A stretch of 64,000 nt of DNA from Tetramitus jugosus (taxonomy: Eukaryota; Protista; Heterolobosea), in contig OW569345.1 of NCBI GenBank assembly GCA_937625935.1, positions 372,001 through 436,000 on the forward strand, given 5' to 3'. Positions 34,123-50,475 of this stretch are shown here, one piece after another (the first letter of the stretch is position 1; each line of letters opens with the position of its first letter). Under the pieces are notes generated by a model. The model did not search any database. It saw only the letters and a program-made list of their open reading frames with translations, and was not told the origin of the DNA. A program made the position numbers and the translations under genes.

Positions 34123-35277
34123 ATGCCTGCAGTGAAAAACTCAAAGTCAAAAACCGCAAAGAAGGACAAAGTCGAAGAAGCCAAGTTGGTTGTTTTTGGA
34201 ACGGGTATGCATGAAATGAACACTAATAATAATAATCATTTGTACAAGGAGCAAGCTGTACAGCAGTTTCGTGCACACCTCGCACACCACGCACACACAA
34301 CAACAACAACGTTCATCATCACAACGACAACACAAACGCAAGGACAAGGAGTAATAGTAGCAATAACACACCATCATTTGTTTGGTCACAAGTTGGCTGC
34401 TGAGTCGTAGGTGCAATCCAGAGTGTGCGTTGAGGAATGGTGCCAAGAACATTTTGTCAATCGTACTAGAAGAGTACGACTCGTCAAATGTATAGTATTC
34501 GCAGTCAATGATTCACTGTTGTTGTTATGTGAGTGTGTCGTGCATGTGTACGTGGTGCATGGCTGTGTGTGTGTGTGTGTGCATGTGACTGCTGTGGTGT
34601 ACATCTTGTTTTTCTGTGCTTGTGCTTGTGTTTGTGTGTTTGTGTGTGTATATATATATTTTTGATCACAAAGCACTCACACTTTGTTTCTTCTACCATC
34701 TGCATCTACTTCATCCAATCGTCAATCACTCATCGATACAGGTGGTGTTGGTAAGTCAGCACTCATTGTACAATTGATACAGTCACAATTCGTGGAGCAA
34801 TATGATCCTACATTGGAAGACTCATACAGAAAGGACACCAACCTCGATGGCAAGGACATTATTATGGACATTTTGGACACAGCAGGACAAGAGGAATTCC
34901 ACAGCTTGAGAGACCAGTACATTCGTCAAGGCGAGGGCTATCTCATCATCTACAGTATCAACAACAGAAACAGTTTTGAGGAAGTAGAGTCGTTTTTGGA
35001 TCAAATTCTGAGTGCAAAGGAAGTCACAGAGGACATGATTGGTGAGGCAGCACAGGAAGTTGCTGCTGTTCTCGTTGGTAACAAGTGTGATCTTGTCGAT
35101 CAGCGTAAAGTCACTAGAGAAGAGGGAGAAGCATTGGCAAAGAAGTATGGTGGTATTTCGTTCTACGAGTCGAGTGCCAAGACACGTCTCAACGTTGAAG
35201 AAGCGTTCCACGACTGTGCACGTCAAGTGTTCCAAAAGGTGAAGAAGGGCAACAAGAAAAAGTGCAAGGTTATGTAA
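34123..35277 (+). CDS. Ras-family small GTPase, 2 exons with a 537-nt intron
   Basis: Exons 34123-34204 and 34742-35277 rebuild KLVVFGTG|GVGKSA. Effector loop YDPTLEDSY, DTAGQEEF, NKCD, ESSAK, and a polybasic + CaaX end (KKKCKVM). Confidence 0.93.
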
Positions 35278-35530
35278 ATCAACTCCCTACTACAACTGCG
35301 ACAACTATTACTATTACTACTAGCGACGTCGGATCCCAATGCTCTGACCATTCCAAACAAACTGTAAAAAACACAAACATTTTTTGTCCCTGTGATTCGC
35401 GCCATTTTCTCCCGCTGTGGTCTGCTGTTGCGCCTTGATTCGAATGGAAGAATTTTTGGTTGCATAACAAACAACAAATCGATTCTCAATCTCCCAACCC
35501 TCTAGTTTGCTCTCTCTATCTATAAAGACA

Positions 35531-37102
35531 ATGTACAGACAAATCATTAACAAACAGCAGTCTCGTAAAGCTCTTGCTTCTGCTCATCATTCCAAGAATG
35601 TTTTGCTGTTGTGTCATCAGAGATTCAACAACATGGCAACCAGCCAGCGCAGCTACACTCACGATAATTTTTATTATGATGAGAGCAGATATTCTTCTGA
35701 TACAACTGCCGAAACAACATTGACAGCGCCATCTACGAGTACACCGATTATGAATGCAGCATCTTCTTCAAGTAGCTCCACAGATGACTCGTCTTCAATT
35801 GCATCACCATCTTCATCATTATCATCTTCAGCCAGCAGCACTCTCTCTCGAGACAAGCATGAACATCAAGTGCGAGAAGTGACTTCACTAGAAGAGTACA
35901 AGTCAGCTGTCAATCACATTTATAAGGAAAAGTGCAAGGTGTCAGTGTTGGGCATTGGTGGTGCAGGTTGTAATGCCGTAGATGGAATGTTCAAGTCCTC
36001 AAGAAATGTGCAAGGTATTCACTTGTTTGCTGTCAATACGGATGCACAGGCACTGAAGAAGACTCTGTGCAATTCTAGGATACAGATTGGTGTTGAGACA
36101 ACAAGGGGACTCGGTGCTGGTTCCGTTCCACAAATCGGTAGAAAATCGGCTGAAGAAAATTTGAAAACTGTGATGGACCATGTAAAAGATTCACAAATGC
36201 TGTTTCTGGCTGCGGGAATGGGTGGCGGCACAGGTACGGGTGCCGCTCCTATCATTGGTTCCGAGGCTCGCAAAATGGGCATCTTGACGGTGGGTGTAAT
36301 TACTACGCCGTTTGCATTCGAAGGAACAAGAAGACAAAAGATTGCTGGTGAGGGGTTGAGAGAACTTGAGAAGGCTGTTGATACTCTAATCGTTGTTCCA
36401 AATGAGAATATTTTAAATATTTCAACAAAGGCTACAACTGTCAATGAAGCATTTAAGGTTGCTGATGATGTTTTGGTAGAAGGTGTCAAGAGCATTACAG
36501 ACTTGATTTTGGAGCCAGGTTTGATTAATTTGGACTTCGCAGATGTAAGGGCAATTATGAAGGATGGTGGTGTTGCTTTCATGGGGACTGGATATGGTTT
36601 CCGTGACTCTTCTTCGAGCATTTCCAGAGATATGCTGCTGACACAAGCAGTATTGAATCAAGTTGGAAACAGATCTGATGCCATGACATCAATATCGAGA
36701 GGTAGAGCTGCTGTTTCTGCCGCCTTGCAAAATCCACTTTTGGATGTCAAGAGTATTTCTCAGGCTCGCAATGTTCTATTGAGCATTGCTGGTGGCCCAG
36801 ATCTCACACTGCACGAAGTACAGGATATTTCCAACATGATCAAGGGTCATGTGCACGAGGATGCAAACATTATCATCGGAGCAAGTAATGACCAAGAGGT
36901 ACCAGAAGGAGCGATCAAAGTGAGTGTCATCGTCACAGGCATACCTAAAGATTTTGTCGTAGAAAAAGCTGAGACACAACAGACCATCCAGCCAGATATT
37001 GTCATTACGCCTGCAACCAATAGAAGTGATGAGAGTAACCATGTGAAGCAAAGTGAAAAGGAAGTTGGATTCCTGCGACGTCTCTTCCGTAATCATTGGT
37101 AG
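35531..37102 (+). CDS. ftsZ: Nucleus-encoded mitochondrial division protein FtsZ
   Basis: N-terminal presequence, GIGGAGCNAV, NTDAQAL, TRGLGAG, signature GMGGGTGTGAAP, PFAFEG, T7 loop PGLINLDFADV, NPLLD. No intron. Confidence 0.95.
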   Translation: MYRQIINKQQSRKALASAHHSKNVLLLCHQRFNNMATSQRSYTHDNFYYDESRYSSDTTAETTLTAPSTSTPIMNAASSSSSSTDDSSSIASPSSSLSSSASSTLSRDKHEHQVREVTSLEEYKSAVNHIYKEKCKVSVLGIGGAGCNAVDGMFKSSRNVQGIHLFAVNTDAQALKKTLCNSRIQIGVETTRGLGAGSVPQIGRKSAEENLKTVMDHVKDSQMLFLAAGMGGGTGTGAAPIIGSEARKMGILTVGVITTPFAFEGTRRQKIAGEGLRELEKAVDTLIVVPNENILNISTKATTVNEAFKVADDVLVEGVKSITDLILEPGLINLDFADVRAIMKDGGVAFMGTGYGFRDSSSSISRDMLLTQAVLNQVGNRSDAMTSISRGRAAVSAALQNPLLDVKSISQARNVLLSIAGGPDLTLHEVQDISNMIKGHVHEDANIIIGASNDQEVPEGAIKVSVIVTGIPKDFVVEKAETQQTIQPDIVITPATNRSDESNHVKQSEKEVGFLRRLFRNHW

Positions 37103-37217
37103 GAGATTCAAGCAATAAACTTTTCGCGGCAATGATATTTCTACGATGAAACCGGTGTTTTGAGGAACAAACGAGCACAATTGATTAGTTGAAACTCGGA
37201 CGGAATAACTAGGTGTG

Positions 37218-40200
37218 ATGAGCGTTGCATCTCTAAAGAGCCATAGCATAGGAGGAACAAAGCCCTTGTTCTCTCCCAATGTAGATATCATCGAGTTCTC
37301 GGATTATGAACCTTTTGAAAAGTATAGGCAGACAATCACTTTTCGAAACAATGATACTGTAAGTATATGTCAAATTCTTGTTGAATTCATCAAATTAATT
37401 ACTCTAACTTTTTGTACAATAGGTTGCTGGTTGCATGAAGCTATTATCTTCTACTTCTCGTTTCTTCCAAGTGATTCCGACAAGAAAAGATATAAGTAGC
37501 AAAGTAGCCCCAGGTATGTTTTCGTTTACAGCTTTTGATGAGCTTTATTGATATCAACATTGTTATTAGGATTGTCCCTCTCGTATGATGTGATTTTTTC
37601 GCCTGAGGAGGCTGTTGATTACTCAAGTCAACTTACAGTGCAAACTGAGAGAGAAGAGTACACTGTACTGATCAGAGCTATTGGGTATAGAGGTATGATA
37701 TCGCTTGTTTCCTTGAGAAATTGAGATTGTTTGCTAATTTTCGACTTAATACCCAGCAAAAATGGATTTACCCCTTCGCGTAATATTTGCGGATGCACCA
37801 GTTAGACATGAATCTATCCAAGATATATATGTGAGGAACATTGGGAGGTGTTCGGCTTCATTTGTTGTGAACACACAGCATCCATTCTCCATTACACCGA
37901 GTGAGGTTTCCAATTTGGCAGTTGGGGATGGATGCCATTTTTCAGTTTCATTCCATCCTGACAAAGTAGGAGACCATTCATCACAAATTCAAATACTTTA
38001 TACAAATGGAGATGTACAAACCTCTATTATCGAGGCATCAGCACGTAACATCAATGTCAAATTAGAGACATCCACCGTTAAGCTTTCAGATACATTTATA
38101 AGTGAACTATCTCAGACGTCCTTCAAAATTATAAATAAGAGCGATGTTAAGGTTAGTTACAGTTGGAAATTATTCGCATCACCTGAAGACGAAACAAAAC
38201 ATAAGTCACGGAGGATTACTCAGCTACCACATGAGATTGAGGAGGATTCAAAAACACACCGACAGGTGAAGAGAGAAATTGAGGCAGACGATCTACAATA
38301 TTCAAACAAAAATTTTACGATATCTCCTTTGTTGGGTGAAATATGGCCAGGCATGGAAGAGTTTATTACTATACAATTTCATCCCAAAATCGAAGCATAT
38401 TTTGAGAATATAGCCTTCTGCGAAGTGAATGGTCGTGAGAGCAGACTCCCTCTAACAATAATCGGAGAGGGAAAGGGTCCTGATGCTTTCTTTTCATTCA
38501 ATGACTTGAATATTGGAGAAATATTTATCAATTCTCCACATGAGTATGAGGTAAGGAATCTATTTCCTTTTTTATTTTCTTTCATACCTTGACTTCGAAG
38601 TTAACACTCAACAATGAAGATTCAACTCGATAATAGAGGAACAATAGAAGCTGCCTTTTCTCTTATTCCACCCACAACTATTTTTGGAAACAAAATCAAG
38701 TTTTCCCCTAGTGAAGGAGTGCTGGCTCCTTGTTCTTCACAAACAATCAAATTGGCTTTAAACTGTGACATTATTGGGGAATTCACCGAGTTTTTTAGGT
38801 GGAAGGTCGAGGGAAAAGTGGATGAGTTAACTCTATGTGTGATGGGCCAGACGATTGGCCCTCAATTTCATTTTAATGTTGAAAGTATTGACTTTGGAAC
38901 AGTTTCATTTAATTTTTTAAATGTTGCTTTTGTGGAGTTATCTAATACATGTGAGATACCCATGAACTATCGCTTGAGAATACCAGAGGATGGATCATTG
39001 CTTCATCGAGAGTTTGATATTATACCCGCGACTGGTACTCTCCTTCCTGATTCAACGAAAAAGATTAGGATTGAGTTCTTGTCCAATACTTGTAAGAGAT
39101 ATAATTCTCAATTAGTAGTGGACATCATTGATGTGGGTGAAAATCTCTTGTCAATTCCTATCAGGGCAAATTGTATTGTACCCGACGTGATATTGTCATC
39201 AACCAAGATCAATTTTGGAGACTGTTTCATTGACTACACCTACTCTCAAGCATTGGACCTCGGAAATACATCTAATCAGCCAGCGAAATACGAGGTGATT
39301 TTACCACAGGATGATCACAAGGCAATATTCACAGTAGATGAAATTCGAGGAGTGGTCTCTTGTAATAGCACTCACAAAATCAAAGTCTCTATTTGCATGA
39401 GGGAGGTTGGAACATTGTATATGCCCCTCTATGTTAAAATAATAGGTAGCAATCGACCTCCATATGAAGTTAGCATATCTGCTTGTGCGATCGGGCCCAT
39501 AGTCGATTTTGACACACGAGTCATTGATTGGGGTAAGGTGAAAGTCTTGGAATCACACGAGAAACAGTTCAAAATTATCAACAAATCTCCGATCGCTGCT
39601 TCATTTTCTCTTTACTTTTCGAAAGAGAGTGAGTCCAATCTATTTAGTTGTGATATACGAAGTGGACAAGTAGCACCTGGGTCAGAGTGTTCGGTTGTGG
39701 TGAGAGTTTCACCAGATGAGAATATGAGATTTACTGAGGATTTAATTGTTGATATTGACGGTGGAGAGAAAACAGAAATTCAATTACAAGCATATGGTGT
39801 TGGTTCATCGATACGTTCATCAATACCTCTAGATATAATTGACATAGGAAATGTGTTCACGAGCATTCCAGTATCAAAATCATTTACAATGGTGAATTCT
39901 GGGCGTAAAACCCAAGCTCTACAATGGCTTCAAATGAGGAGATCGAGAAGTGATGGTCCAGATGTAGTTTTTAAAATATTACCGGAGAGAATTGCGATTC
40001 AACCAAAATCGAGTCAAGAGTTTACAGTACATGGATGTACTTCAAGGGAGGGATTGATTATCGAAAATTTTATATGTAGAACCACAGGGAAGACTCAAAA
40101 GCAAATATATACGACAAAGATTCAAGGAACTTTTATAGTTCCATTGACCAAATTTTCAACAAACAGACTTTCGTTTGAATACACGCATGGAGAAAAGAGT

Positions 40201-43200
40201 ATTCCCCAAGTGCAGACTCAATCTCTTATCATAGCTAATATAACTGCTCTTCCCTTGTCTATTTTACTGAAGGTATCAAGCCCTTTTTCACTTGAATCCC
40301 CAGAGTGTGTTATCCCCGTGGGTTCATCAAAGGAAGTAGTAATACACTTTGATCCAGACTTCAAGCATGATAAAACATCAGCGAATATCAAGCAAAAATT
40401 GACTGTGGCTTATAAGGACCACCCGCAACGAGATTTCATTGATTTACACGCAATGATTAGCTTTCCCAATATTGAAATTCAATCGACAATTGTTGATTTT
40501 GGTACAACTATGGCTGGCGTTGAAAAGAAAAAGCAAATTATTGTGGCAAACACAGGAACAACGGATGCCTATTTTGACTGGAGTGTATATTTGATGGAAG
40601 AGGATAAGACAAAAGAATATATCTTAAATGTTTTCGATGTTATGCCTATAAAAGGGATGATAAAAGCGGGAGAAAAGTCAGTGGTAGAATTGTTGTTTAA
40701 CAGTAAAGCAGAAGGTGCGTTCAGTTGTAGTGCTATATGCCAAGTTCGAGGGGGGCCGAAGTATGTAATACAATTGAGAGGAGAAACATCTGAGATTGTG
40801 TTTACTGCTGACCCAACTGAGATAGACTTTGGGCTTGTGCCGTTTTTTGCCCAAGAGCAACGCGAGATTCAAATAAGTAACATGGGAAAAGTTGTGTTCC
40901 TTTACGAGTTCGACACGACGAGTTTAAAGGTACCAAATCGGATTGAGCTGATTCCCAACTCGGGAAAGGTAAAACCAGGAGAAAAGCAAAGAATAATGAT
41001 CAAGTTCTCACCAGGAACTCCAGAAGAGATTAGAGAGACATGTACACTTTTTATTGGCCAATGTGAACCTGTTCAAATCACAATTAGTGCTATTGCGGTT
41101 CAACAATCTGTGCAGCTGAGCCTAATTCAAGAAGAGAATAATATTCCTGAAGAAGTATATCAAGAGGCACGATCTCTAGTGAGCCAAAATCAGTCATTGA
41201 ATACACGAGCGATTCAGAAAATGTACCCGAGCCACAAATCCAAACACTTTCCTTCGGTCGATAATGAAATCATGCTCGAGGTTGATCGATTGATGCTCAA
41301 GAATTATCTTCAGAAATATCCAATCGTGTATCGCGGGAAGAGCAGGGGTGGAGCACCAGTGGGAACTGCATCTAGTGATACTCCGTCTTCTCGTGGATCC
41401 ACAATGAGTAGGCCAATCACAAGGATGATCGATGCACAATATGTGATGCATAAGTATTTGTGTGATTTTGGGAATGTGGTCAAGGGCACCACAAGAAAAA
41501 AAACTTTTAGGATTAGCAACCTTGGGGTACTTCCAGTATCGTTCAGATTTGATAAGAAAGAATTCGCGAAGAATGGCATACTAATTGAACCGAGTGAAGT
41601 GAAGAGATTACCTGGTTATCCAAATACAGAATCTCAAACAGTCGAGCTTCATCTCCAAACAAAGCACAAGAGAGTTGTTGTGGGAGAGTATTCAACAGTT
41701 TTATTGATGGAAGTGATCAATGGATATTTAATAGAACTGTGCGTTAAAGCTAACATCATCATACCTGATATCGAAGTATCTGCGACTGATATCGACTTTG
41801 GAAATACATATGTCGGTTTTGCTCAAACATATACATTGCAATTACACAACCAGAAAGAGATTGCTTGTGATTGGATATTGGATTACTCACAGCGATCTCA
41901 ACTGGCAGGAATACCGAAATCAGGGAAGGAGATCCAAATTGAAGAGCGAGTATTTATCTGCAGCAAAGAGAAAGGCACTCTCCTTGCTGGGGAAAGAATG
42001 AACATCGAGATCTCTTTTTTGCCTAATTCACAAAAGAAATATTTGGACTGGATCGTTCTTCGGTGTTCTAGCAATCCCAAGACAAAGAAGATATCATGCA
42101 GTGGAATAGGAAAAGAAATCGATGTTCAGCTCAGTACTTTTGATCTCTATTTGGGTCCATCTCTTCCATATGGAGCTTTTGAAGCCCCCATAACAGTTAC
42201 GAACAATTGCGATTATGCCATGGATTTCATTTCTATTGACTTTGATCAGAAGAATATTCTCGAAAGTGAGCGGTTATTATCATGTACAAATCTAAATGGA
42301 TATATTTTGGTTAATCCTAGAGTTCCTGGAGATGATTTACCTGAGGACTTTTATCAAATTCAAGGACAAACAGCCTTAGATCATCAGGAAGCCTTTAATG
42401 ATGTAACAAATGCAGCATCTATTGACAAAAAGATTTTATTTTTGTACGGACCACCAATGTCTGGTGTCAGTTCATTATCAAGATATCTATCATCATCATT
42501 GCATATACCTTTAATATCGCTCGATGAGATAATGGATCATGTTGAAAATGATGGTATGATAAGTGAGAATATTGAGTCTGTTGAGGAGAACACTACATTT
42601 GATATCAACAACAAGATTGAAACTGTACTCAACAGATTAAGAATGAGAATATCTCATGATGATTGTCGAAAAGGGTTTATCTTTGACGGCTTAGGAATAT
42701 CCTGCTTGTTAACCGATTATCAAAAAACTCAAATCATTCTTCGTGCATGTCACCCCTCTAGTGTTACAACATTGGTGCTCTCTGTTACTGAGTCTCAAAT
42801 TAAGCTCAGAACAATTAATATTTCTGAATTAGAGGTGATAAATGCTTTGCAAGAATCTGTGGTTGATGAGATGACAGATGATGAGTTTGATATGCTTGAT
42901 AATGATAGGAAGCAAGATATCGAAAAGAAATTGCGGGAGCATCGATTAAGAAGAGAGCAACTAGATAATCTTAAACATGAAAAACAACTGAGAATGGAGT
43001 TGGACAAGAACGATTCCATGGATGTTGTTTCATTCATCCACACAAAGATAGAAGATGACAAAATCATTCGATTACAACAAGAGGAGGCGAGGAAGAAGCG
43101 AAAAAAGAAACAAGTCAAGAATGCGCCTCCAACGCCCGAGATAGAAGTACCCCCGACTTTTGAAGAGTTAAACATCATAGCAGATACTGATGACCATATT

Positions 43201-46200
43201 ATTCGGCGATTGAAGCAGTTTAGGACGTCCTACATTGGGATCATTGGCCTTCTTGAAAGTGGTTACAGAACCGACGAAGAATTGGAGTTGGAAAGACTTG
43301 AGTTAGAGAGCGCGAAGAAGAAAAGAACAAAATCAAAAAAGAAAGATACATTGGAGGAGCAGAGTGTACCACCGAAAGTGTATTATTTTGTCAATAATTC
43401 ATCATTTGAAGAGTTGGTGAATAGTATTGAACAAGCTTTACCCGATGGGTTTTTACAAGAAGAACAACAAACTTCTGCAGTAGAAGTTATTCCAGACTTA
43501 TTGATTCCCGATCCATACACACGCCAGAAGATCCACATACCATCGCAAAGGAAAGACAAAGACATTCAACATATCTCACTCTTTTCTGGAGATGAAGAAA
43601 AACAAAAATGTACGAGATGGACTCTTCCCCCTCAATCCAAAGTTAAAATGTTCGTCCGGTTTAGCAGTCCTGTAGTGGGTACTTTCGAATCAGTTCTTCA
43701 TTTCTGTGTGTATGGAAAAAAGTCGAGTTTCAAGGTGAAGTGTAAGGGTGTTGTCAACTACCCAGATATCAGCACTCATGATAGGACACTATTTCCAAGA
43801 AGGATAAAGCAGAGGATAGAAAAACTCGTCGTTGTGAAAAAGTATATTATGAGTGAACGATGCTTTGATTTTGGACCTCTACTGAGACGTGATTCTTACA
43901 CAGAGATCCAAGAAACCCCTAATCATATCACCAGTACTAAGTATTATGAAACATTCACTCTCACGAATAATGGATTATTTGATGTTGAGCTTAATATTTT
44001 CATGAGAGGAAATTCCAACAACTTTTCAGTAGAACCAAAGTCTCTACTGATCAAAAAAGATCAAACTGGGTCCATTAAGCTGTGGGGATTACCAAGAACA
44101 ACTGGTGTAGTTCGTGATTCTGTGATATGCACAATCAAAGATAACCCTATTCCCTTTCAATTTGATGTACAACTCACCGGGGCAGAGCCAAAAGCCACAG
44201 TTGATCGGCTGTCAGTAGATTTCGGTCGAGTACTGCTTAAAAATAATACTTCAGCCGAAGTTATTGTTTTAAAGAATATATGTCCAATTCCCATTTCCTG
44301 GAAACTATCCGAAACACATTCACTAAGCTCAGAATTTGTGATTGAACCCAAACTTGGACGCCTGGAAGTCGGAGAGATTATCGATGTTCGAATTATGTTT
44401 CACCCAAAACAACCAAGTCTCGTTAAAGATTTTCTCATCATCAATGTGACAGATGAGGATGAATTTAAAAAATCTGACCAGATCAAGATAGCTATTCTCG
44501 CAGAATCATTTAATCTCGAAGCAAAGATTGATTCAGATTTGAACTTCGGTACGATCAAAGTGGTCGATGGTGCGACGAAAACAATTCAGCTGAGCAATTC
44601 AGGAAAATATGAAATTCACTACAGCTTTGATATCCCCAAGCACTTACAGAAGCTATTCACATTTACTCCTCTCTCTGGCTCATTAGATCCAAAGGCGAAA
44701 GGAGCGACCACAATCACAATCTACTTTAAGTCTCACACAGAAAAGAAGCTAAAGAATTGTACAGACATTTCCTGTATTCTAACAGATGCCAAAACAAAAG
44801 AACTATTGAGTAATATCAAACTCAATATAAATGTGGAGGCAGTATTTTCCAAGTTTACAGTCTCGCCTTCGCACGGTGTTAACTTTGGACCCATTAACTT
44901 TGACAAGCAGAAGATTAAGCAAATTGAGATTTCTAATGAAGGAGTCTTTCCTTTCACATTTCAGCTGTTCGATCTCAAAACAGGGAAAGTGGAAGAAATC
45001 GACAGACCTCAGTCAAAATCCAAGAAAGTTCCTCAAAAGAAAAAGGATATCAAAAATATCAAAAAAGAGATTACAGTCGGACGATTTCTTATTGAGCCTC
45101 ACTCAGGAGAAGTGCTTCCAGGTACCAAAGAGAAAGTTTGTGTTACTTTTTGTGGAGAAGGATCAAATACATTTAAAGAAGTCTTGGGGATTGACATATC
45201 CGGGAGAGAGATTACGTCTGATCCTCATGGAATTCCATTTGACTTACAAGGTGAATCGTGCATACCTGGAATTATCACCAATGATTTCGATTCGATATTT
45301 GAGGAGCAACAAATTGTTCAAAATATTGACCAAGTCACAGGCAACAAGGGATGCATATTTTGTTCGGATGATCGCGTTTTTCACTTTGGTACAGTTGGAG
45401 CTGGGCGAAAGGTGGCAGAGAAGGTCAAGGTAATCAATCCTAACAAAGTACCCTGTAATGTAGAGTGCTCCGTAAGACCTAGAGATGTATCTGACAGTGC
45501 TAGCTCAGCTGCTTTCGATGTACAGCCTCAGAAGCTCTTTGTCCCTCCTCATGAGCATCGTTATGTCACTGTTTACTTTGAACCCCGCTCATTGTTTTCT
45601 TATTCTGCAATTTTGGACGCAGTTGTCACTGACGGAAAGGATCCCAGTACGAACAACTTAAGGATCGAGATAAGAGGAGATGGCTCTCTTCCTAGGATTG
45701 TAGTGAAACAACCCATAAGTGAGGAATCAGGTCCACACAACTTGCTGTTCCCTCGAACAATGGTCGGTCGAAGAACTGAATTGCCAATCGTGATTCAGAA
45801 TGAAGGAGTATTAAGTGCCACAGTGCGATTTGATCTAAAACCTCAAGAATCGATACTATTCCCTGAGAAATCTCAAGAATTTTTATTGAATAGTGGAGAT
45901 ACGAAGACTTTCACTATTGCTTTTGAACCAAAGAAAGTGGAGAAAATTGACTCACAACTCACAATGGTTGTGTTAAATAACCATTTTGAGAACACTATCT
46001 TTAGAATTCTTGCAGAAGGATTTAAGGAAGACATTACATTTGATGATCTACCCAACAATCAATCTGAAGACTCCTTACATTTTGGATTTTGTGATGTTGG
46101 AAGACCCAAGCAATTTTCATTTAATTTAGTTAATCATAGTCCGGATCATATCAAATACATTTGGAAGAGTTTACCCACTATCACTGTATCTCCTATGTTT

Positions 46201-49200
46201 GGTCACATCCATTCGAAAACATCCCAGGATATTACAGTAACACTACTTTCATCTGAGCCATTGGAATACATTAACCAACTCCTTCCCGTAGAATTCACAA
46301 AAATTCGATATTTAGGAGAAATGAAAGAGTGGAATGAAAGACATAAAACAATTAAGTGGATACAAGTCGACGAAGAAGAAGAGAAACGAAAGATTGAAGA
46401 AGAACAATTGAGAATCGAGGAAGAGAAAAACAAAAAGAAAAAAGGACGACCAAAGTCAAAGAAAGAAAGGGATGTTACAACAAGCACTCAAACACCTTAT
46501 GAGGTCAAATTGGTGTCCAGACGCGTGGAAGAGGTGAATCCCGAACCAGAAATTGATTTTTTGCAGACCATTCCTTCAAAATTCTTAAAGATATCTGCGT
46601 TGGCTGATCATGCATCATTTGAATGCAATTTTCCACCCTCAGTTGTGTTTAAATTGACAAAAATGTTCGAAACACGAAGGATTACTCTCTCCATGAAAAA
46701 TATCGGAAGGGTAGATATGACTTATAATTGGATAGGACACCAATTCGAGGGCAGTCCATTTTCCATTTCCCCAGCTGCTGGTATTTTAACCCCGCATAGT
46801 GAAGAAACATTTACGCTCAAATATTCCCCAATGGATGTCGGAGATCATCGAACGAGGCTGGAATGTATCATTCCAAACACAAAACAAGATTGTCCAAGTA
46901 TAGACCTTTCTGGAACAAGTTTGTGTCCTATTGTCCACTTTGAGTTGCCTCCAAACGATTACTTAACGAGCGGCCGCCGGGTGTCTACTTCCAAAGGTCC
47001 TGGTGGACTCTTTGGAATGATAGAAATAGATACCAAAGTAATGGAGATTAGTTCTTGTGGTATCAGAATTCGAAATACAAGAAGATTCTACGTGTTGAAC
47101 CCGACGGACCTTTCATATGAATTTGAATGGCAAAGGATTTACGAAAACGAAGAAACTGAAGATTCATTTAATTGTACAACTAAACGAGGAATTATACATA
47201 GCGGAAAAAAGGCAGAGATTGTTTTCGAGTATACACCCTTCCATTTACAGACTTGTGAGTCTTATTGGGTGTTCTGTATTCCAAGTAAGAAGATCACTAT
47301 TCCCTTCCTCCTAGTTGGCCATGCTAAGGAGCCAGACATTTATTTAGATACTCCACGTATGAACTTTCAGACAGTTCTCGTGGGAAAACCATCCAAAAAG
47401 ATTCTAACTTTGGTCAACAAAGAAAATATTCCATTTAGTTTCAGCTTTGCTCAAACTTGTTTAGACGGTTCGTTGGGAGAAACAAACTCGGGAAAAGTTC
47501 TCTCTATTCAACCTACTTCTGGTACTATCGCTGCCGGTGAAGAGATGCCGATTACTATCGCTTTCACACCAAAAAATGAAAACCCTTACAATTTCATGCT
47601 TACATGCCAAGTGAAAAAGAAGCCAACACTTCTCACATGTAACATTAAGGGCGAGGGATTTATTGTTCATGAGAGACTGGAGTTCGAAGGAAAATCAATT
47701 CTTGCTCCTCACGTACCAAACAGACTATCTTTTGATAGAACACAGATTAATGAAAAGAAGGTGAAAAAAGTGGTCATCTTCAATGATGGAAATTACAATT
47801 TCGATTTCTCATGGCATCATCCCGCGGACGGTGCAATTCAAATTGAACCTATGAACGGAACTGTTTGTAAGCGAGGTCGTCAGACATGTGATATCATATT
47901 CACACCATCGAGTCAAATCACGCTCGAAAACTACAAGTGCATTTGTAAAGTTACAAATGGAGGAACCTATGTTATCTACATCAACGCAAGTGGTACTAAA
48001 CCTAAAGTTAATTTTAGCTTTACTCAATATGAATTTGGCCCATGTTTCTTGTTTTACAATGGCATGTCTCCAAGGTCAACTTTGTTAGAAATTCGGAATG
48101 ATGACGTGCACGAGCTTGGCTACGAAGTATTTTTCGATAACAAGGTACATTTTGAAGTAGAAGCAACAGCAACTGTGTTAAAACCAGGAGAGACAAAAAA
48201 GGTCCCAATAATATTTAAGCCAAAAGAAATTAAGCATTACAAAGAAGTTGTAACATTCGAAATTAATGGTCTGTTTAAAGTACCTGTGATAGTGTCAGGA
48301 GAAGGAACATCCGCTCGGATTGAACTTTGGAATCCTATTGACAAATTGATAAACTTTGGTCCTCTTCAAGTAGGTGATACGGTTGAGACAACAATCGCGA
48401 TCGTGAACAAGAGCAAAATTAAAGCCGAGATCTCTATTCCATCTGAAGTGTATGCTCAAATGACCAAGCATTACATCACTTTAAGTCTAAAGAAGGGAGC
48501 AACTGTTGTTCTGGAACCCAAGACACAATATCCAATAACAATTCACTATCGCCCCGAAGTTCGATTGTCCACCTGGTCCCATGACTTGCTTATTCACGTA
48601 GCGGGAAGGACAAAGACTCTATCGACCATAACTGGAGCATGTCAAGGAATAGAAGCGAAATTGAATACATCATTGTTATCATTTGGGCCCATCATTAGAG
48701 GGACTCAAGTTGTTCACAAGATTGTTCTTGAAAATTCGGGGGACGTCAGTGTAAAGTTTGCATGGAATACAGAGAAATTAAGTGAGGAATTCAACATTTT
48801 CCCCAAAAAAGGAATAGCTGCAGCAAACGGAGAAGTCAGTATCGATATTACTTATTCTCCAGGAGAAAAGTCAAAACCTGTGATTAACAACAAAGTTCAG
48901 TGCATTGTTAAAGGCCTTTCTCAACCATTGATTCTTGCCTTGAATGGATCTTGCAAGCATAACAACTCTGAAAACTCAGAAAAGCTTCAATTCAAGATTA
49001 ATGTTCGACAAATTCAAAAGAAACTAATCAGACTCACCAACCCAACAAAATCAGATTGGAAATTGAAACCTGAAATCGATAATTCTGTGTTTTATGGAGC
49101 TGAATTGGTTGATCTTCCTGCGGGACAGACACGCGAATATGAAATTAACTACGCACCTGTTCGAATGACTGAAGGAGTACCAGATTTTGGGACGCTCTTC

Positions 49201-50475
49201 CTCCCTCGTCCTGACGGTGATGCGTTCTCATTCCAACTTACTGGAGAAGCAATAGAACCTCTCCCTGTTGATAATATCAGTCGAGAGTTGTTCGCAAAGG
49301 AACAACATCAAGAGAATTTGTTAATCGAGAATTGGTTAGGAAGGGCTCAACGTTTCAGAGTTATGCCTGAGATCACTGTGAATCAACCCAACTATCTTAA
49401 GGCTGTTGAATATATTGATGTACCTCCCCTATCGAAGAGAGAGTACAAATTCTCCTTTTATGCCTATAAGGAGGCTTCCTTCAGCGGAAAAGTCGTGTTC
49501 AGAAACGAGCAAACAAAAGAATTTCTGTTCTATAACATATCTTATAGGATTAACCCTCCTCGGGTCATTCAGACTCTAACATTCGAGTCAATCATTCGAC
49601 AGAAAAGTTGTCAAAGTATAACAATTGAGAATCCTCTGCCCACAGACACAACTCTATCCATCAAATGCGATAGTAGAGATATTGTTGTTCCATCAGATTT
49701 AGTGATACCTGCAACTTCAGTGGCAAAACTTGATGTTTGCTATTTCCCTCTAATGATTGATCCGAGTGGTACAAACTCTAGGACACATGAAGAGAAAGAA
49801 CTCGTTCTCTTCAATTCTGAATTGGGCTCCTTCCCCTATCTACTCAAGTTGAAAGCAGTACCAGCGGGACCAGAGAAAAATATCCACTTTTCAGTTGGTT
49901 TAGGCACTAGTATGACACAAACCGTTCGGTTTACAAACTATTGTGGTGTTGCTACAGAATATATTTGTAAACTTGAGACGACAAATTTTGTGTTGTCTGA
50001 CTCGAAACCAATCAAAACTCATCCCTCAGGTCCGAATGGAAAAGAAGAATCAATCGTTATCACATTTGAGCCAAACCAACTGGGAGATACAAGTGACAAA
50101 CTGATAGTCAGTAGCAAACAAGGTGGAGAATATACATTCCATTTATTTGGTCATTGTTTGCCTCCGAAACCCCAAGGTCCCCTCGATGTCCTCCCGAATG
50201 CCCCAGCTAGTATCTCATTCAAAAATGTATTCGGAAAGAAGATGGATTACAAATTTTCAGTTGACAATGATATGTTTATCGTCAAACCTGAAAGTGTGTC
50301 TATGACGCCCAAGCAAAAGATTCAAGTGCTCGTGTCTCTAAAGATTGGTGGGAAGACCCAGCAAGTGTCTACCTCCACTCAGCGGATATATGGCAAACTC
50401 ACGGCGAGTATCAAGGACAAATCAGTGCTCCTAAACAGTCCGCAATGGGTTTATTATCTATTAGGGAATAAATAA
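37218..50475 (+). CDS. HYDIN: HYDIN, axonemal central-pair protein (~4300 aa), 5 exons
   Basis: Exons 37218-37358, 37423-37513, 37570-37692, 37757-38550, 38620-50475. Many ASH/PapD-like repeats (DFG...N...F...P..G), a central adenylate-kinase-like domain (~42430-42780) and a C-terminal WVYYLLG. Confidence 0.93.

What the first reader, a model, noticed from the sequence alone, without database searches (positions are those of the whole stretch)
37055..37102. Mitochondrial FtsZ ending in a MinD-type membrane-targeting helix: possible natural self-anchoring Z-ring
Seen: FtsZ ends EKEVGFLRRLFRNHW after a short linker (~35 aa) and lacks the D-I-P of the canonical bacterial C-terminal peptide (DIPAFLRK/R). 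Known: the E. coli MinD membrane-targeting sequence is KKGFLKRLFGG, so GFLRRLF matches at 6 of 7 positions with the same amphipathic spacing. Bacterial FtsZ needs FtsA, ZipA or SepF to reach the membrane, and no such tether is established for mitochondrial FtsZ. An engineered FtsZ fused to the MinD helix forms Z-rings in liposomes unaided. Inference: this protein may attach itself to the inner membrane, giving a tether-free mitochondrial division system.
Basis: partly seen in the sequence, partly recalled or inferred. Interest (0 to 1): 0.85.

Follow-up and report, generated by a model that had tools for sequence, protein, structure and literature searches.

The report
Mitochondrial FtsZ with Trp-ended amphipathic tail
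A soil amoeboflagellate's only FtsZ ends in a short, positively charged, greasy-sided helix that is conserved in one mitochondrial FtsZ clade across eukaryotes, so it could anchor the division ring to the inner membrane unaided, although this is untested and similar self-anchoring FtsZs are already known elsewhere.

Summary
An intron-less, expressed nuclear gene (35531-37102, +) encodes a 523-aa FtsZ that ends in EKEVGFLRRLFRNHW. Its GFLRRLF matches the E. coli MinD tail GFLKRLF at 6 of 7 positions.

- The tail is not peculiar to this genome. It is the local form of a C-terminal motif (basic residues, hydrophobic pairs 3-4 apart, then [KR][KR][HN]W-COOH) seen in at least 23 FtsZs. Seventeen of them form one clade on a core-only tree. 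Named members come from Malawimonas and Pharyngomonas ("mitochondrial FtsZ2"), Percolomonas, Planoprotostelium and Cyanidium.
- The peptide is under purifying selection, and helical periodicity is kept while the charged residues change.
- The genome has a single FtsZ. It has no detectable MinC, MinD, MinE, FtsA, SepF, ZipA or ZapA.
- The tail also lines up with the alphaproteobacterial C-terminal peptide (D-I-G-F-I-R-R against D-I-P-A-F-L-R-R), so it is probably a remodelled version of that peptide. The likeness to MinD is probably convergent.
- Natural self-anchoring FtsZs are already published for Mycoplasma genitalium, chloroplast FtsZ1 and Odinarchaeota FtsZ1.

Direct membrane binding is my best guess (about 0.5) and is untested. 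An unknown protein partner remains a serious rival. I rate this a new variant of a known kind, of moderate interest.

The parts
35531..37102 (+). Complete intron-less coding sequence of the only FtsZ in this genome (523 aa plus stop).
   Evidence: ORF and translation. Pfam Tubulin and FtsZ_C. TIGR00065 scores above its cut-off only at this place in the genome. Metatranscriptome contigs are colinear, with no joints.
35531..35659 (+). Presequence-like N-terminus (residues 1-43). It has seven K/R, no D/E, and two predicted helices.
   Evidence: Sequence. AF2 helices at 2-16 and 22-36. RNA contigs start upstream of the ATG, at 35499 and 35514. Import into mitochondria is inferred, not shown.
35939..36424 (+). 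FtsZ/tubulin GTPase domain (residues 137-298).
   Evidence: Pfam PF00091, E 7e-43. pLDDT above 90.
36596..36694 (+). Lineage-specific insertion of about 30 residues before the FtsZ_C domain. The closest relatives share it.
   Evidence: Alignment A1. Low pLDDT at 359-386.
36689..36943 (+). FtsZ C-terminal domain (residues 387-471).
   Evidence: Pfam PF12327, E 4e-22.
36944..37066 (+). Disordered linker of about 41 residues (472-512). Its sequence and length are not conserved.
   Evidence: pLDDT below 50 over 475-511. Linkers in relatives are 13-139 residues and cannot be aligned. Strain polymorphisms fall here at 37008, 37025 and 37045.
37067..37099 (+). Tail GFLRRLFRNHW (residues 513-523). It is a cationic amphipathic helix ending in Trp and is the conserved C-terminal motif of this mitochondrial FtsZ clade.
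   Evidence: Predicted helix at 513-521. muH is 0.578, the 98.5th percentile. The hydrophobic face spans 100-280 degrees and the Arg/Asn face 300-80 degrees. Against P0003 there are 6 synonymous changes and 1 conservative change in 11 codons.
37100..37102 (+). Stop codon TAG.

Best explanation
The gene encodes the single, nuclear-encoded, presumably matrix-targeted FtsZ of a heterolobosean-type protist. It has a globular GTPase core, a disordered linker of about 41 residues, and an 11-residue tail, GFLRRLFRNHW.

The tail is the local version of a motif that defines one pan-eukaryotic clade of mitochondrial FtsZ. GenBank records label members of this clade 'mitochondrial FtsZ2'. The motif has basic residues upstream, hydrophobic pairs spaced 3-4 residues apart, then [KR][KR][HN]W at the free C-terminus. 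It most likely descends from the alphaproteobacterial C-terminal peptide (D/E-I-P-A-F-L-R-R-Q-A-N). That descent would involve loss of the proline, two extra hydrophobic positions and a terminal tryptophan.

Proposed mechanism (inferred, not shown): the tail folds into a three-turn amphipathic helix. Its face of F514, L515, L518, F519, H522 and W523 inserts into the matrix leaflet of the cardiolipin-rich inner membrane, and R516, R517 and R520 contact anionic head groups. One tail binds weakly. A polymer of many subunits binds strongly, so only assembled filaments attach. That would let one protein form and anchor the ring in a genome with none of the known bacterial tethers or Min proteins.
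For: 1. The tail is real and expressed.
2. An exhaustive profile search and a later search found at least 23 FtsZs with presequence-like N-terminal extensions and W-ended basic/aromatic tails. These take the place of the bacterial peptide.
3. On a tree built from core-domain columns only, all 17 W-tail proteins tested form one clade (SH-aLRT 99). The window lies in a subclade with Pharyngomonas and Percolomonas (98). Named members span Discoba, malawimonads, Amoebozoa and red algae.
4. Thirteen of the 17 tails lie at or above the 97th percentile of helical hydrophobic moment. The C-terminally anchored hydrophobicity profile peaks at 90-100 degrees, and 311 of 10,000 shuffles reach that value. 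Charged positions vary (RR, EF, ET, KF) while hydrophobic positions hold.
5. Mean hydrophobicity of the tails is 0.53, against 0.27 for 296 bacterial-type C-terminal peptides. Net charge of the window's tail is +3, against 0 for the E. coli FtsZ peptide and +4 for the MinD tail.
6. Purifying selection: against the 56%-identical P0003, the last 11 codons carry 6 synonymous changes and one L-to-I change. The linker cannot be aligned.
7. AlphaFold2 gives a disordered linker and a helix at 513-521.
8. The genome (26.35 Mb, 56 contigs) has one FtsZ. It has no MinC, MinE, SepF, ZipA or ZapA hit, and only a 19-bit FtsA hit. The best 'MinD' hits are NUBPL/Nbp35-type P-loop NTPases.
9. Experimental precedents exist. 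The M. genitalium FtsZ C-terminal amphipathic helix binds liposomes and E. coli membranes. The chloroplast FtsZ1 C-terminal RR/KLFF motif, and the last 10 residues of cyanobacterial and red-algal FtsZ, bind membranes. The window's ...RRLF... core with a terminal aromatic residue has the same build.
Against: - No membrane-binding experiment or simulation was possible here.
- Amphipathicity does not discriminate. The protein-binding E. coli FtsZ peptide has muH 0.527 and bacterial peptides average 0.47.
- Twelve per cent of same-composition shuffles of the window's own tail reach its muH.
- Three of the 17 tails (P0123, P0125, P0127) have weak helical moments.
- The terminal Trp is nearly invariant (15 of 17) and the residue before it is restricted to H/N/Y/W. 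That is more position-specific than usual for a pure lipid-binding helix and would suit a binding pocket.
- The tail has only 11 residues, and the AF2 confidence of the helix is low (pLDDT about 54).
- The tether searches were six-frame profile searches of one assembly. Small or divergent genes such as MinE, and any eukaryote-specific tether, could be missed.
Confidence: 0.5

Rival explanations
1. The tail is a remodelled FtsZ C-terminal peptide that still works as a protein-docking peptide. Its partner would be an unidentified, probably eukaryote-specific, inner-membrane or matrix protein that tethers or regulates the ring. On this reading FtsZ is not self-anchoring.
For: - The tail sits where the bacterial peptide sits, at the extreme C-terminus after a disordered linker. 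It keeps the FLRR core, and D-I-G-F-I-R-R in P0003 lines up with D-I-P-A-F-L-R-R.
- The terminal W is nearly invariant and the residue before it is restricted.
- Bacterial peptides are themselves amphipathic (muH about 0.47-0.53).
- In human mitochondria, the localisation of a rickettsial FtsZ to the inner membrane depended on its C-terminus, and many inner-membrane proteins co-purified with it.
Against: - Every known peptide-binding partner searched for is absent from this genome: FtsA, ZipA, SepF and MinC.
- The tail is kept both in species whose FtsZ is labelled FtsZ2 (Malawimonas, Pharyngomonas), a label that implies a paralogue although none was examined here, and in this genome with a single FtsZ and no Min proteins. 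It therefore does not depend on those proteins.
- Amoebozoan-like members have very short basic/aromatic ends (...GIFRKWW...NFFGKW). These look like interfacial lipid anchors rather than a structured docking peptide.
- Length and register vary between lineages.
Confidence: 0.32
2. The tail mainly tunes FtsZ polymer behaviour, for example lateral bundling or self-interaction as the basic C-terminal variable region does in Bacillus subtilis FtsZ, or turnover by a matrix protease. On this reading it is not an attachment device.
For: The tail carries a cluster of basic residues next to the C-terminus. It is established knowledge for bacterial FtsZ that C-terminal variable regions affect bundling and that ClpXP recognises the FtsZ C-terminus. 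This is my own knowledge and was not tested here.
Against: This reading does not explain the conserved hydrophobic periodicity or the terminal Trp. It also leaves the ring without any known way to reach the membrane in this genome.
Confidence: 0.1
3. The MinD-like tail is a chance or neutral leftover with no function.
For: The 6 of 7 identity to E. coli MinD is limited to the window and P0003 lineage.
Against: The motif is conserved across a clade that spans eukaryotic supergroups. In 11 codons there are 6 synonymous changes and 1 conservative change. The adjacent linker diverges freely.
Confidence: 0.03

Closest known systems
Mitochondrial FtsZ, clade labelled 'mitochondrial FtsZ2' in GenBank/UniRef (Malawimonas californiana AKB90670, Pharyngomonas kirbyi AKB90683; Leger et al. 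2015 data set)
   Same: It falls in the same clade on a core-domain tree (SH-aLRT 99). It has the same build: presequence-like N-terminus, alphaproteobacterial-type core, short linker and a W-ended basic/aromatic tail.
   Different: This genome keeps only this paralogue and no Min system. The tail of its sub-lineage is unusually MinD-like and peptide-like (GFLRRLF). It carries an extra insertion of about 30 residues. I could not read Leger et al. 2015, so I do not know whether the tail motif was described there.
Bacterial FtsZ conserved C-terminal peptide (alphaproteobacterial form D/E-I-P-A-F-L-R-R-Q-A-N), which binds FtsA, ZipA, SepF or MinC
   Same: It occupies the same position after a disordered linker. 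It shares the F-L-R-R core and is amphipathic.
   Different: It has no proline. It has two more hydrophobic positions and a terminal Trp, about twice the mean hydrophobicity, and a higher net positive charge. All known binding partners are absent from the genome.
E. coli MinD membrane-targeting sequence (...KKGFLKRLFGG)
   Same: Six of 7 residues are identical over GFL[K/R]RLF. Both are short C-terminal cationic amphipathic helices.
   Different: It sits on a different protein family. MinD is absent from this genome. Relatives of the window's FtsZ diverge from the MinD sequence while keeping the W-ended motif, so the likeness is probably convergent.
Mycoplasma genitalium and M. pneumoniae FtsZ C-terminal amphipathic helix (bioRxiv 10.1101/2023.08.29.555414)
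   Same: An FtsZ that lacks the canonical C-terminal peptide and carries an amphipathic C-terminal helix in its place. For that protein, binding to liposomes and to E. coli membranes was shown by experiment.
   Different: The Mycoplasma helix is about 23 residues long, carries a cholesterol-recognition motif and is bacterial. FtsA is still present in those species. The mitochondrial tail has 11 residues, ends in Trp and is untested.
Chloroplast FtsZ1 C-terminal motif (RR/KLFF; Liu et al. 2022; An et al. 2024, PMC11285052)
   Same: It is also an organellar FtsZ paralogue. Its short basic and aromatic C-terminal end binds membranes weakly and no longer binds the ancestral tether. The ...RRLF... 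core is shared.
   Different: It is of cyanobacterial descent, is described as an amphiphilic beta-strand, and works alongside FtsZ2-ARC6. Here a single FtsZ would have to do everything.
Engineered FtsZ-YFP-mts (FtsZ fused to the MinD helix; Osawa, Anderson and Erickson 2008, from my own knowledge; constructs of this kind appear in papers listed and are cited)
   Same: FtsZ core, spacer and a MinD-like amphipathic helix at the C-terminus.
   Different: It is an artificial construct. The natural protein's behaviour in vesicles is unknown.

Membership tests
FtsZ (tubulin/FtsZ superfamily) | Tubulin/FtsZ GTPase domain plus FtsZ_C domain, scoring above the curated cut-offs. | tested here: met
   PF00091 scores 147.5 bits (cut-off 33) and PF12327 scores 78.8 bits (cut-off 27). 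TIGR00065 scores 364 bits summed (cut-off 295).
Mitochondrial FtsZ clade ('mt-FtsZ2') | Groups with named mitochondrial FtsZ2 sequences and away from bacterial FtsZ. | tested here: met
   On a core-domain tree, the 17 W-tail sequences, including Malawimonas and Pharyngomonas mt-FtsZ2, form one clade with SH-aLRT 99. This was a quick search without bootstrap.
Mitochondrial FtsZ clade ('mt-FtsZ2') | Nuclear-encoded, with an N-terminal targeting presequence. | tested here: met
   Its neighbours are eukaryotic genes (a Ras GTPase and a HYDIN/CFAP65-like gene). It is present in an oligo-dT RNA library. The first 43 residues are basic with no acidic residue and include two predicted helices. This is sequence-level evidence only.
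Mitochondrial FtsZ clade ('mt-FtsZ2') | Localises to the mitochondrial matrix or division site. | not testable with these tools
   This needs microscopy or fractionation.
Canonical FtsZ C-terminal peptide | Consensus [DE]-[IV]-P-x-[FY]-L-[RK] at the C-terminus. | tested here: not met
   There is no proline in the last 25 residues. A regular expression for [IVL]P.[FWY][LMI][RK] fails on all W-tail proteins but matches 296 bacterial-type FtsZs. Only the F-L-R-R core is retained.
Canonical FtsZ C-terminal peptide | A cognate binding partner (FtsA, ZipA, SepF or MinC) is present. | tested here: not met
   No hit reaches a cut-off in the genome.
MinD-type membrane-targeting sequence | Short C-terminal cationic amphipathic helix. 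| tested here: met
   muH is 0.578 against 0.414 for the last 11 residues of E. coli MinD. Net charge is +3 against +4. A helix is predicted at 513-521.
MinD-type membrane-targeting sequence | Homology to the MinD tail (common descent). | tested here: not met
   The sequence is MinD-like only in the window and P0003. The family consensus ends in [KR][KR][HN]W. There is no MinD in the genome.
MinD-type membrane-targeting sequence | Binds anionic membranes. | not testable with these tools
   This needs a liposome or in-cell assay.
Self-anchoring FtsZ (M. genitalium C-terminal helix, chloroplast FtsZ1, OdinFtsZ1) | FtsZ lacks the canonical tether-binding peptide and carries a terminal amphipathic motif. 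| tested here: met
Self-anchoring FtsZ (M. genitalium C-terminal helix, chloroplast FtsZ1, OdinFtsZ1) | Direct liposome or membrane binding that depends on that motif. | not testable with these tools
   This was shown for the precedents but not for any mitochondrial FtsZ in the literature I could search.

The most novel reading that the evidence does not exclude
The W-ended basic/aromatic tail is the long-sought membrane anchor of mitochondrial FtsZ throughout eukaryotes. If so, mitochondria turned the ancestral tether-binding peptide into a built-in lipid anchor, which would explain why FtsA-type tethers were lost. In heteroloboseans such as this one, which have one FtsZ and no Min system, a single bacterial-derived protein would form a self-anchoring inner-membrane division ring.
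Probability: 0.4. Interest if true: 0.75.

Novelty: new variant of a known kind. Interest (0 to 1): 0.52.

Why it matters
How mitochondrial FtsZ reaches the inner membrane is unresolved. No homologue of FtsA, ZipA or SepF was detected here, and I found no paper that names a tether. This work turns one curious tail into a defined, conserved and selected motif, [KR][KR][HN]W-COOH after hydrophobic pairs, shared by a mitochondrial FtsZ clade from Discoba, malawimonads, Amoebozoa and red algae. That makes the question directly testable with simple fusions and liposome assays. If the motif binds lipid, it would be a third independent case of an FtsZ converting its C-terminal end into a membrane anchor, after Mycoplasma and chloroplast FtsZ1. 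It would also provide a natural minimal ring-former for synthetic-cell work. If the motif binds a protein, it is bait for finding the missing mitochondrial tether.

Tried and rejected
- Leger et al. 2015 (PNAS) could not be read by DOI or PMC id. I therefore cannot say whether the tail motif was noted there.
- A profile search with 17 W-tail proteins in the word-indexed database returned almost only alphaproteobacterial FtsZ and added no new eukaryotic members.
- I looked for mitochondrial 'FtsZ1'-type paralogues with a canonical peptide among hits that have N-terminal extensions. The one checked, P0149, lies in a bacterial dcw cluster (ftsQ-ftsA-ftsZ-lpxC), so its extension is a gene-call artefact.
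- I considered that the tail might descend from a second conserved motif inside alphaproteobacterial FtsZ linkers, (S/G)-L-(F/M)-x-R-(M/L)-(T/A)-G, found in 147 of 186 sequences. Short-motif similarity cannot separate this from descent from the C-terminal peptide. I favour the peptide because of its position and the D-I-G-F-I-R-R form.
- Weak 'MinD' hits in the genome proved to be NUBPL/Nbp35-type NTPases.
- Paper searches for 'mitochondrial FtsZ1/2' or mt-FtsZ tails found nothing relevant.
- Complex prediction was not used, because no candidate partner exists and I do not claim a protein-protein contact.
Full report
**Observation.** The window encodes an uninterrupted ORF from the first in-frame ATG at 35531 to TAG at 37100-37102 (523 aa). 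Its last 15 codons, 37055-37099, read EKEVGFLRRLFRNHW. Pfam assigns a Tubulin/FtsZ GTPase domain to residues 137-298 and an FtsZ_C domain to residues 387-471. About 41 residues separate FtsZ_C from the 11-residue tail GFLRRLFRNHW. The last 25 residues contain no proline. I translated E. coli K-12 minD from NC_000913 and read its C-terminus as ...EEEKKGFLKRLFGG. The stated 6 of 7 identity over GFL[K/R]RLF is therefore correct.

**The gene is real and expressed.** Contigs from four independent soil metatranscriptome studies, one from an oligo-dT library, lie colinearly on the gene. They start upstream of the ATG (35499 and 35514) and run past the stop (to 37116-37273). There are no joints, hence no introns, and no differences in 37046-37185. 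A 99%-identical protein from another data set ends identically (P0001). The first 43 residues are basic, lack acidic residues and are predicted helical, as expected for a matrix-targeting presequence. Import itself is inferred. The neighbours are a Ras-family GTPase and a HYDIN/CFAP65-like ciliary gene. A 56%-identical orthologue, P0002, lies on a 77-kb eukaryotic contig with the same FtsZ-HYDIN arrangement.

**Relatives.** The nearest proteins are eukaryotic (P0003, P0002, P0006), followed by alphaproteobacterial FtsZ at 44-51% identity.
- An exhaustive profile search of 1.84 billion representatives, read tail by tail, separates two kinds of C-terminus.
- Bacterial-type proteins end in (D/E)-I-P-A-F-L-R-R-Q-A-N.
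- Seventeen proteins, including the window's, have N-terminal extensions and end instead in a basic/aromatic peptide. It terminates in Trp in 15 of the 17. Examples are ...GFIRRLFRNHW, ...GGFLEFLTRHW, ...SGLIKFFKKHW, ...ESLWKRLAKHW, ...TLWSVLKKYW and ...GLFRKHW.
- A further search added six amoebozoan-like members with shorter ends, such as ...GIFRKWW...NFFGKW and ...NFWKKWW.
- Named members are 'mitochondrial FtsZ2' of Malawimonas californiana and Pharyngomonas kirbyi, and FtsZs of Percolomonas cosmopolitus, Planoprotostelium fungivorum and Cyanidium caldarium.
- On a maximum-likelihood tree built from core-domain columns only, with tails and linkers excluded, all 17 form one clade (SH-aLRT 99). 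The window sits in a 10-member subclade with the heteroloboseans Pharyngomonas and Percolomonas (98).

The tail is thus a shared derived character of one ancient mitochondrial FtsZ lineage. It is not an oddity of this genome.

**Biophysics.** I used the Fauchere-Pliska scale throughout.
- The window's last 11 residues have a helical hydrophobic moment (muH) of 0.578. That is the 98.5th percentile of about 215,000 11-mers from the collected FtsZs.
- For comparison, the last 11 residues of E. coli MinD give 0.414, E. coli FtsA 0.592, and the E. coli FtsZ peptide 0.527.
- On a helical wheel, F, L, L, F, H and W occupy 100-280 degrees, and R, R, R and N occupy 300-80 degrees.
- Thirteen of the 17 tails are at or above the 97th percentile.
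- Anchored at the C-terminus, the family profile is K-rich at -13 to -10, hydrophobic at -8/-7 and -5/-4, K/R at -3/-2, H/N/Y/W at -1 and W at 0. Periodicity peaks at 90-100 degrees, and 311 of 10,000 column shuffles reach that value.
- Mean hydrophobicity is 0.53, against 0.27 for 296 bacterial-type peptides.
- AlphaFold2, run with the 17-sequence alignment, gives a disordered linker (pLDDT below 50 over 475-511) and a helix at 513-521 with low confidence (pLDDT about 54).

There are caveats. Bacterial peptides are also amphipathic (mean muH 0.47). Twelve per cent of same-composition shuffles of the window's tail reach its muH. Three family members have weak moments.

**Selection.** Between the window and P0003, the last 11 codons differ at seven codons. 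Six changes are synonymous and one is L to I. The preceding linkers, of 41 and 75 residues, cannot be aligned. In the syntenic orthologue P0002 the arginines are replaced (RR becomes EF), but the hydrophobic spacing and ...RHW are kept.

**Genome inventory.** The assembly (26.35 Mb, 56 contigs) holds a single FtsZ. FtsZ_C and TIGR00065 hit only this locus, and the other weak hits are tubulin-sized ORFs. There are no hits to MinE, MinC, SepF, ZipA or ZapA, and only a 19-bit hit to FtsA. The best 'MinD' hits (35 bits against a cut-off of 213) are NUBPL/Nbp35-type P-loop NTPases. These were six-frame profile searches with working positive controls, but absence from one assembly is not proof.

**Relation to known peptides.** The MinD likeness is confined to the window and P0003 sub-lineage, so I read it as convergence on the same physical solution. 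The same residues also align with the alphaproteobacterial peptide. F-L-R-R is identical, and P0003's D-I-G-F-I-R-R matches D-I-P-A-F-L-R-R with P-A replaced by G. Given the identical position after a disordered linker, the most economical history is a remodelled C-terminal peptide: proline lost, Q-A-N replaced by hydrophobic and basic residues, and Trp added at the end. The other half ('lacks amphipathic conservation in orthologues') is not met. An alternative origin is a second conserved motif that I noticed inside alphaproteobacterial linkers. It cannot be excluded.

**Literature.** Natural FtsZs that anchor themselves are already published.
- The M. genitalium FtsZ C-terminal amphipathic helix replaces the canonical peptide and binds liposomes and E. 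coli membranes.
- The Arabidopsis FtsZ1 C-terminal RR/KLFF motif, and the last 10 residues of cyanobacterial and red-algal FtsZ, bind membranes.
- Odinarchaeota FtsZ1 uses an N-terminal helix.
- A rickettsial FtsZ expressed in human mitochondria needs its C-terminus for inner-membrane localisation.
- None of the papers I could search describes the mitochondrial W-ended motif or names a tether for mitochondrial FtsZ.

**Mechanism and rivals.** My best explanation, at about 0.5, is direct and avidity-dependent insertion of the tail helix into the matrix leaflet of the inner membrane. The main rival, at about 0.32, is that the tail still docks onto an unidentified protein. The near-invariant terminal Trp and the descent from a docking peptide favour this rival. 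The absence of every known partner, the retention of the motif whether or not Min proteins and a second FtsZ are present, and the very short aromatic/basic ends in amoebozoan-like members count against it. A role mainly in bundling or turnover gets about 0.1. A neutral leftover is effectively excluded by the conservation data.

**Verdict.** The gene belongs to a known family. The tail is a new, apparently undescribed variant of a known kind, namely FtsZ C-terminal peptides that act as membrane anchors. Interest is moderate.

Noticed in passing
Proteins P0004-P0102 and others (alphaproteobacterial FtsZ), 55-115 residues before their C-termini: Most alphaproteobacterial FtsZs (147 of 186 scanned) carry a second short conserved motif inside the 'disordered' linker. 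Its consensus is roughly [KR]xx(S/G)-L-(F/M/L)-x-R-(M/L/I)-(T/A)-G-x-G-[RK], for example MSLFRRMTSFG, SLMQRLAAVGLGR and GLFSRMTGGGR. It looks like a small cationic amphipathic element. I found no description of it in the papers searched, and it resembles the mitochondrial tail about as well as the C-terminal peptide does.
   Followed up: partly
window 36596-36694: An insertion of about 30 residues lies between the FtsZ core strand (...GTGYGF) and the FtsZ_C domain. P0002 shares it, P0003 has a longer version, and P0006 has a much shorter one. AF2 models it with low confidence. The scan also noted it separately (s1-538638).
   Followed up: partly
window 37215-50475 and L016 14173-21236: A very large HYDIN/CFAP65-like ciliary gene, including a 3,953-aa ORF at 38614-50475, lies just downstream of FtsZ. 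The same FtsZ-HYDIN order is kept on the 77-kb contig that carries the 56%-identical orthologue P0002. Synteny is therefore conserved between two heterolobosean-type genomes.
   Followed up: partly
L017 1-434 and P0001: Public gene calls for the close relatives are cut short at the N-terminus. P0003 is called from MLGIGGAG, but the same frame continues upstream with ...THDNFYY..., which matches the window protein. P0001 starts at the internal Met35. The presequence would be missed in those records.
   Followed up: partly
window 34684-35277: A Ras-family small GTPase ORF (197 aa; Pfam Ras, E 2e-52) lies directly upstream of FtsZ on the same strand. It ends in a polybasic stretch followed by CKVM, which looks like a CaaX prenylation box.
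   Followed up: no
window 34380-34760: A CA/TG-rich low-complexity stretch yields spurious ORFs rich in C-V and T-H repeats on both strands. It lies between the upstream ORF and the Ras gene.
   Followed up: no
window 35582-37045: The soil metatranscriptome contigs differ from the window at about 30 positions across the gene. Two differences change linker residues (T493M at 37008 and S499C at 37025) and none falls in the tail. Several strains of this organism appear to be active in soils sampled by different studies.
   Followed up: partly
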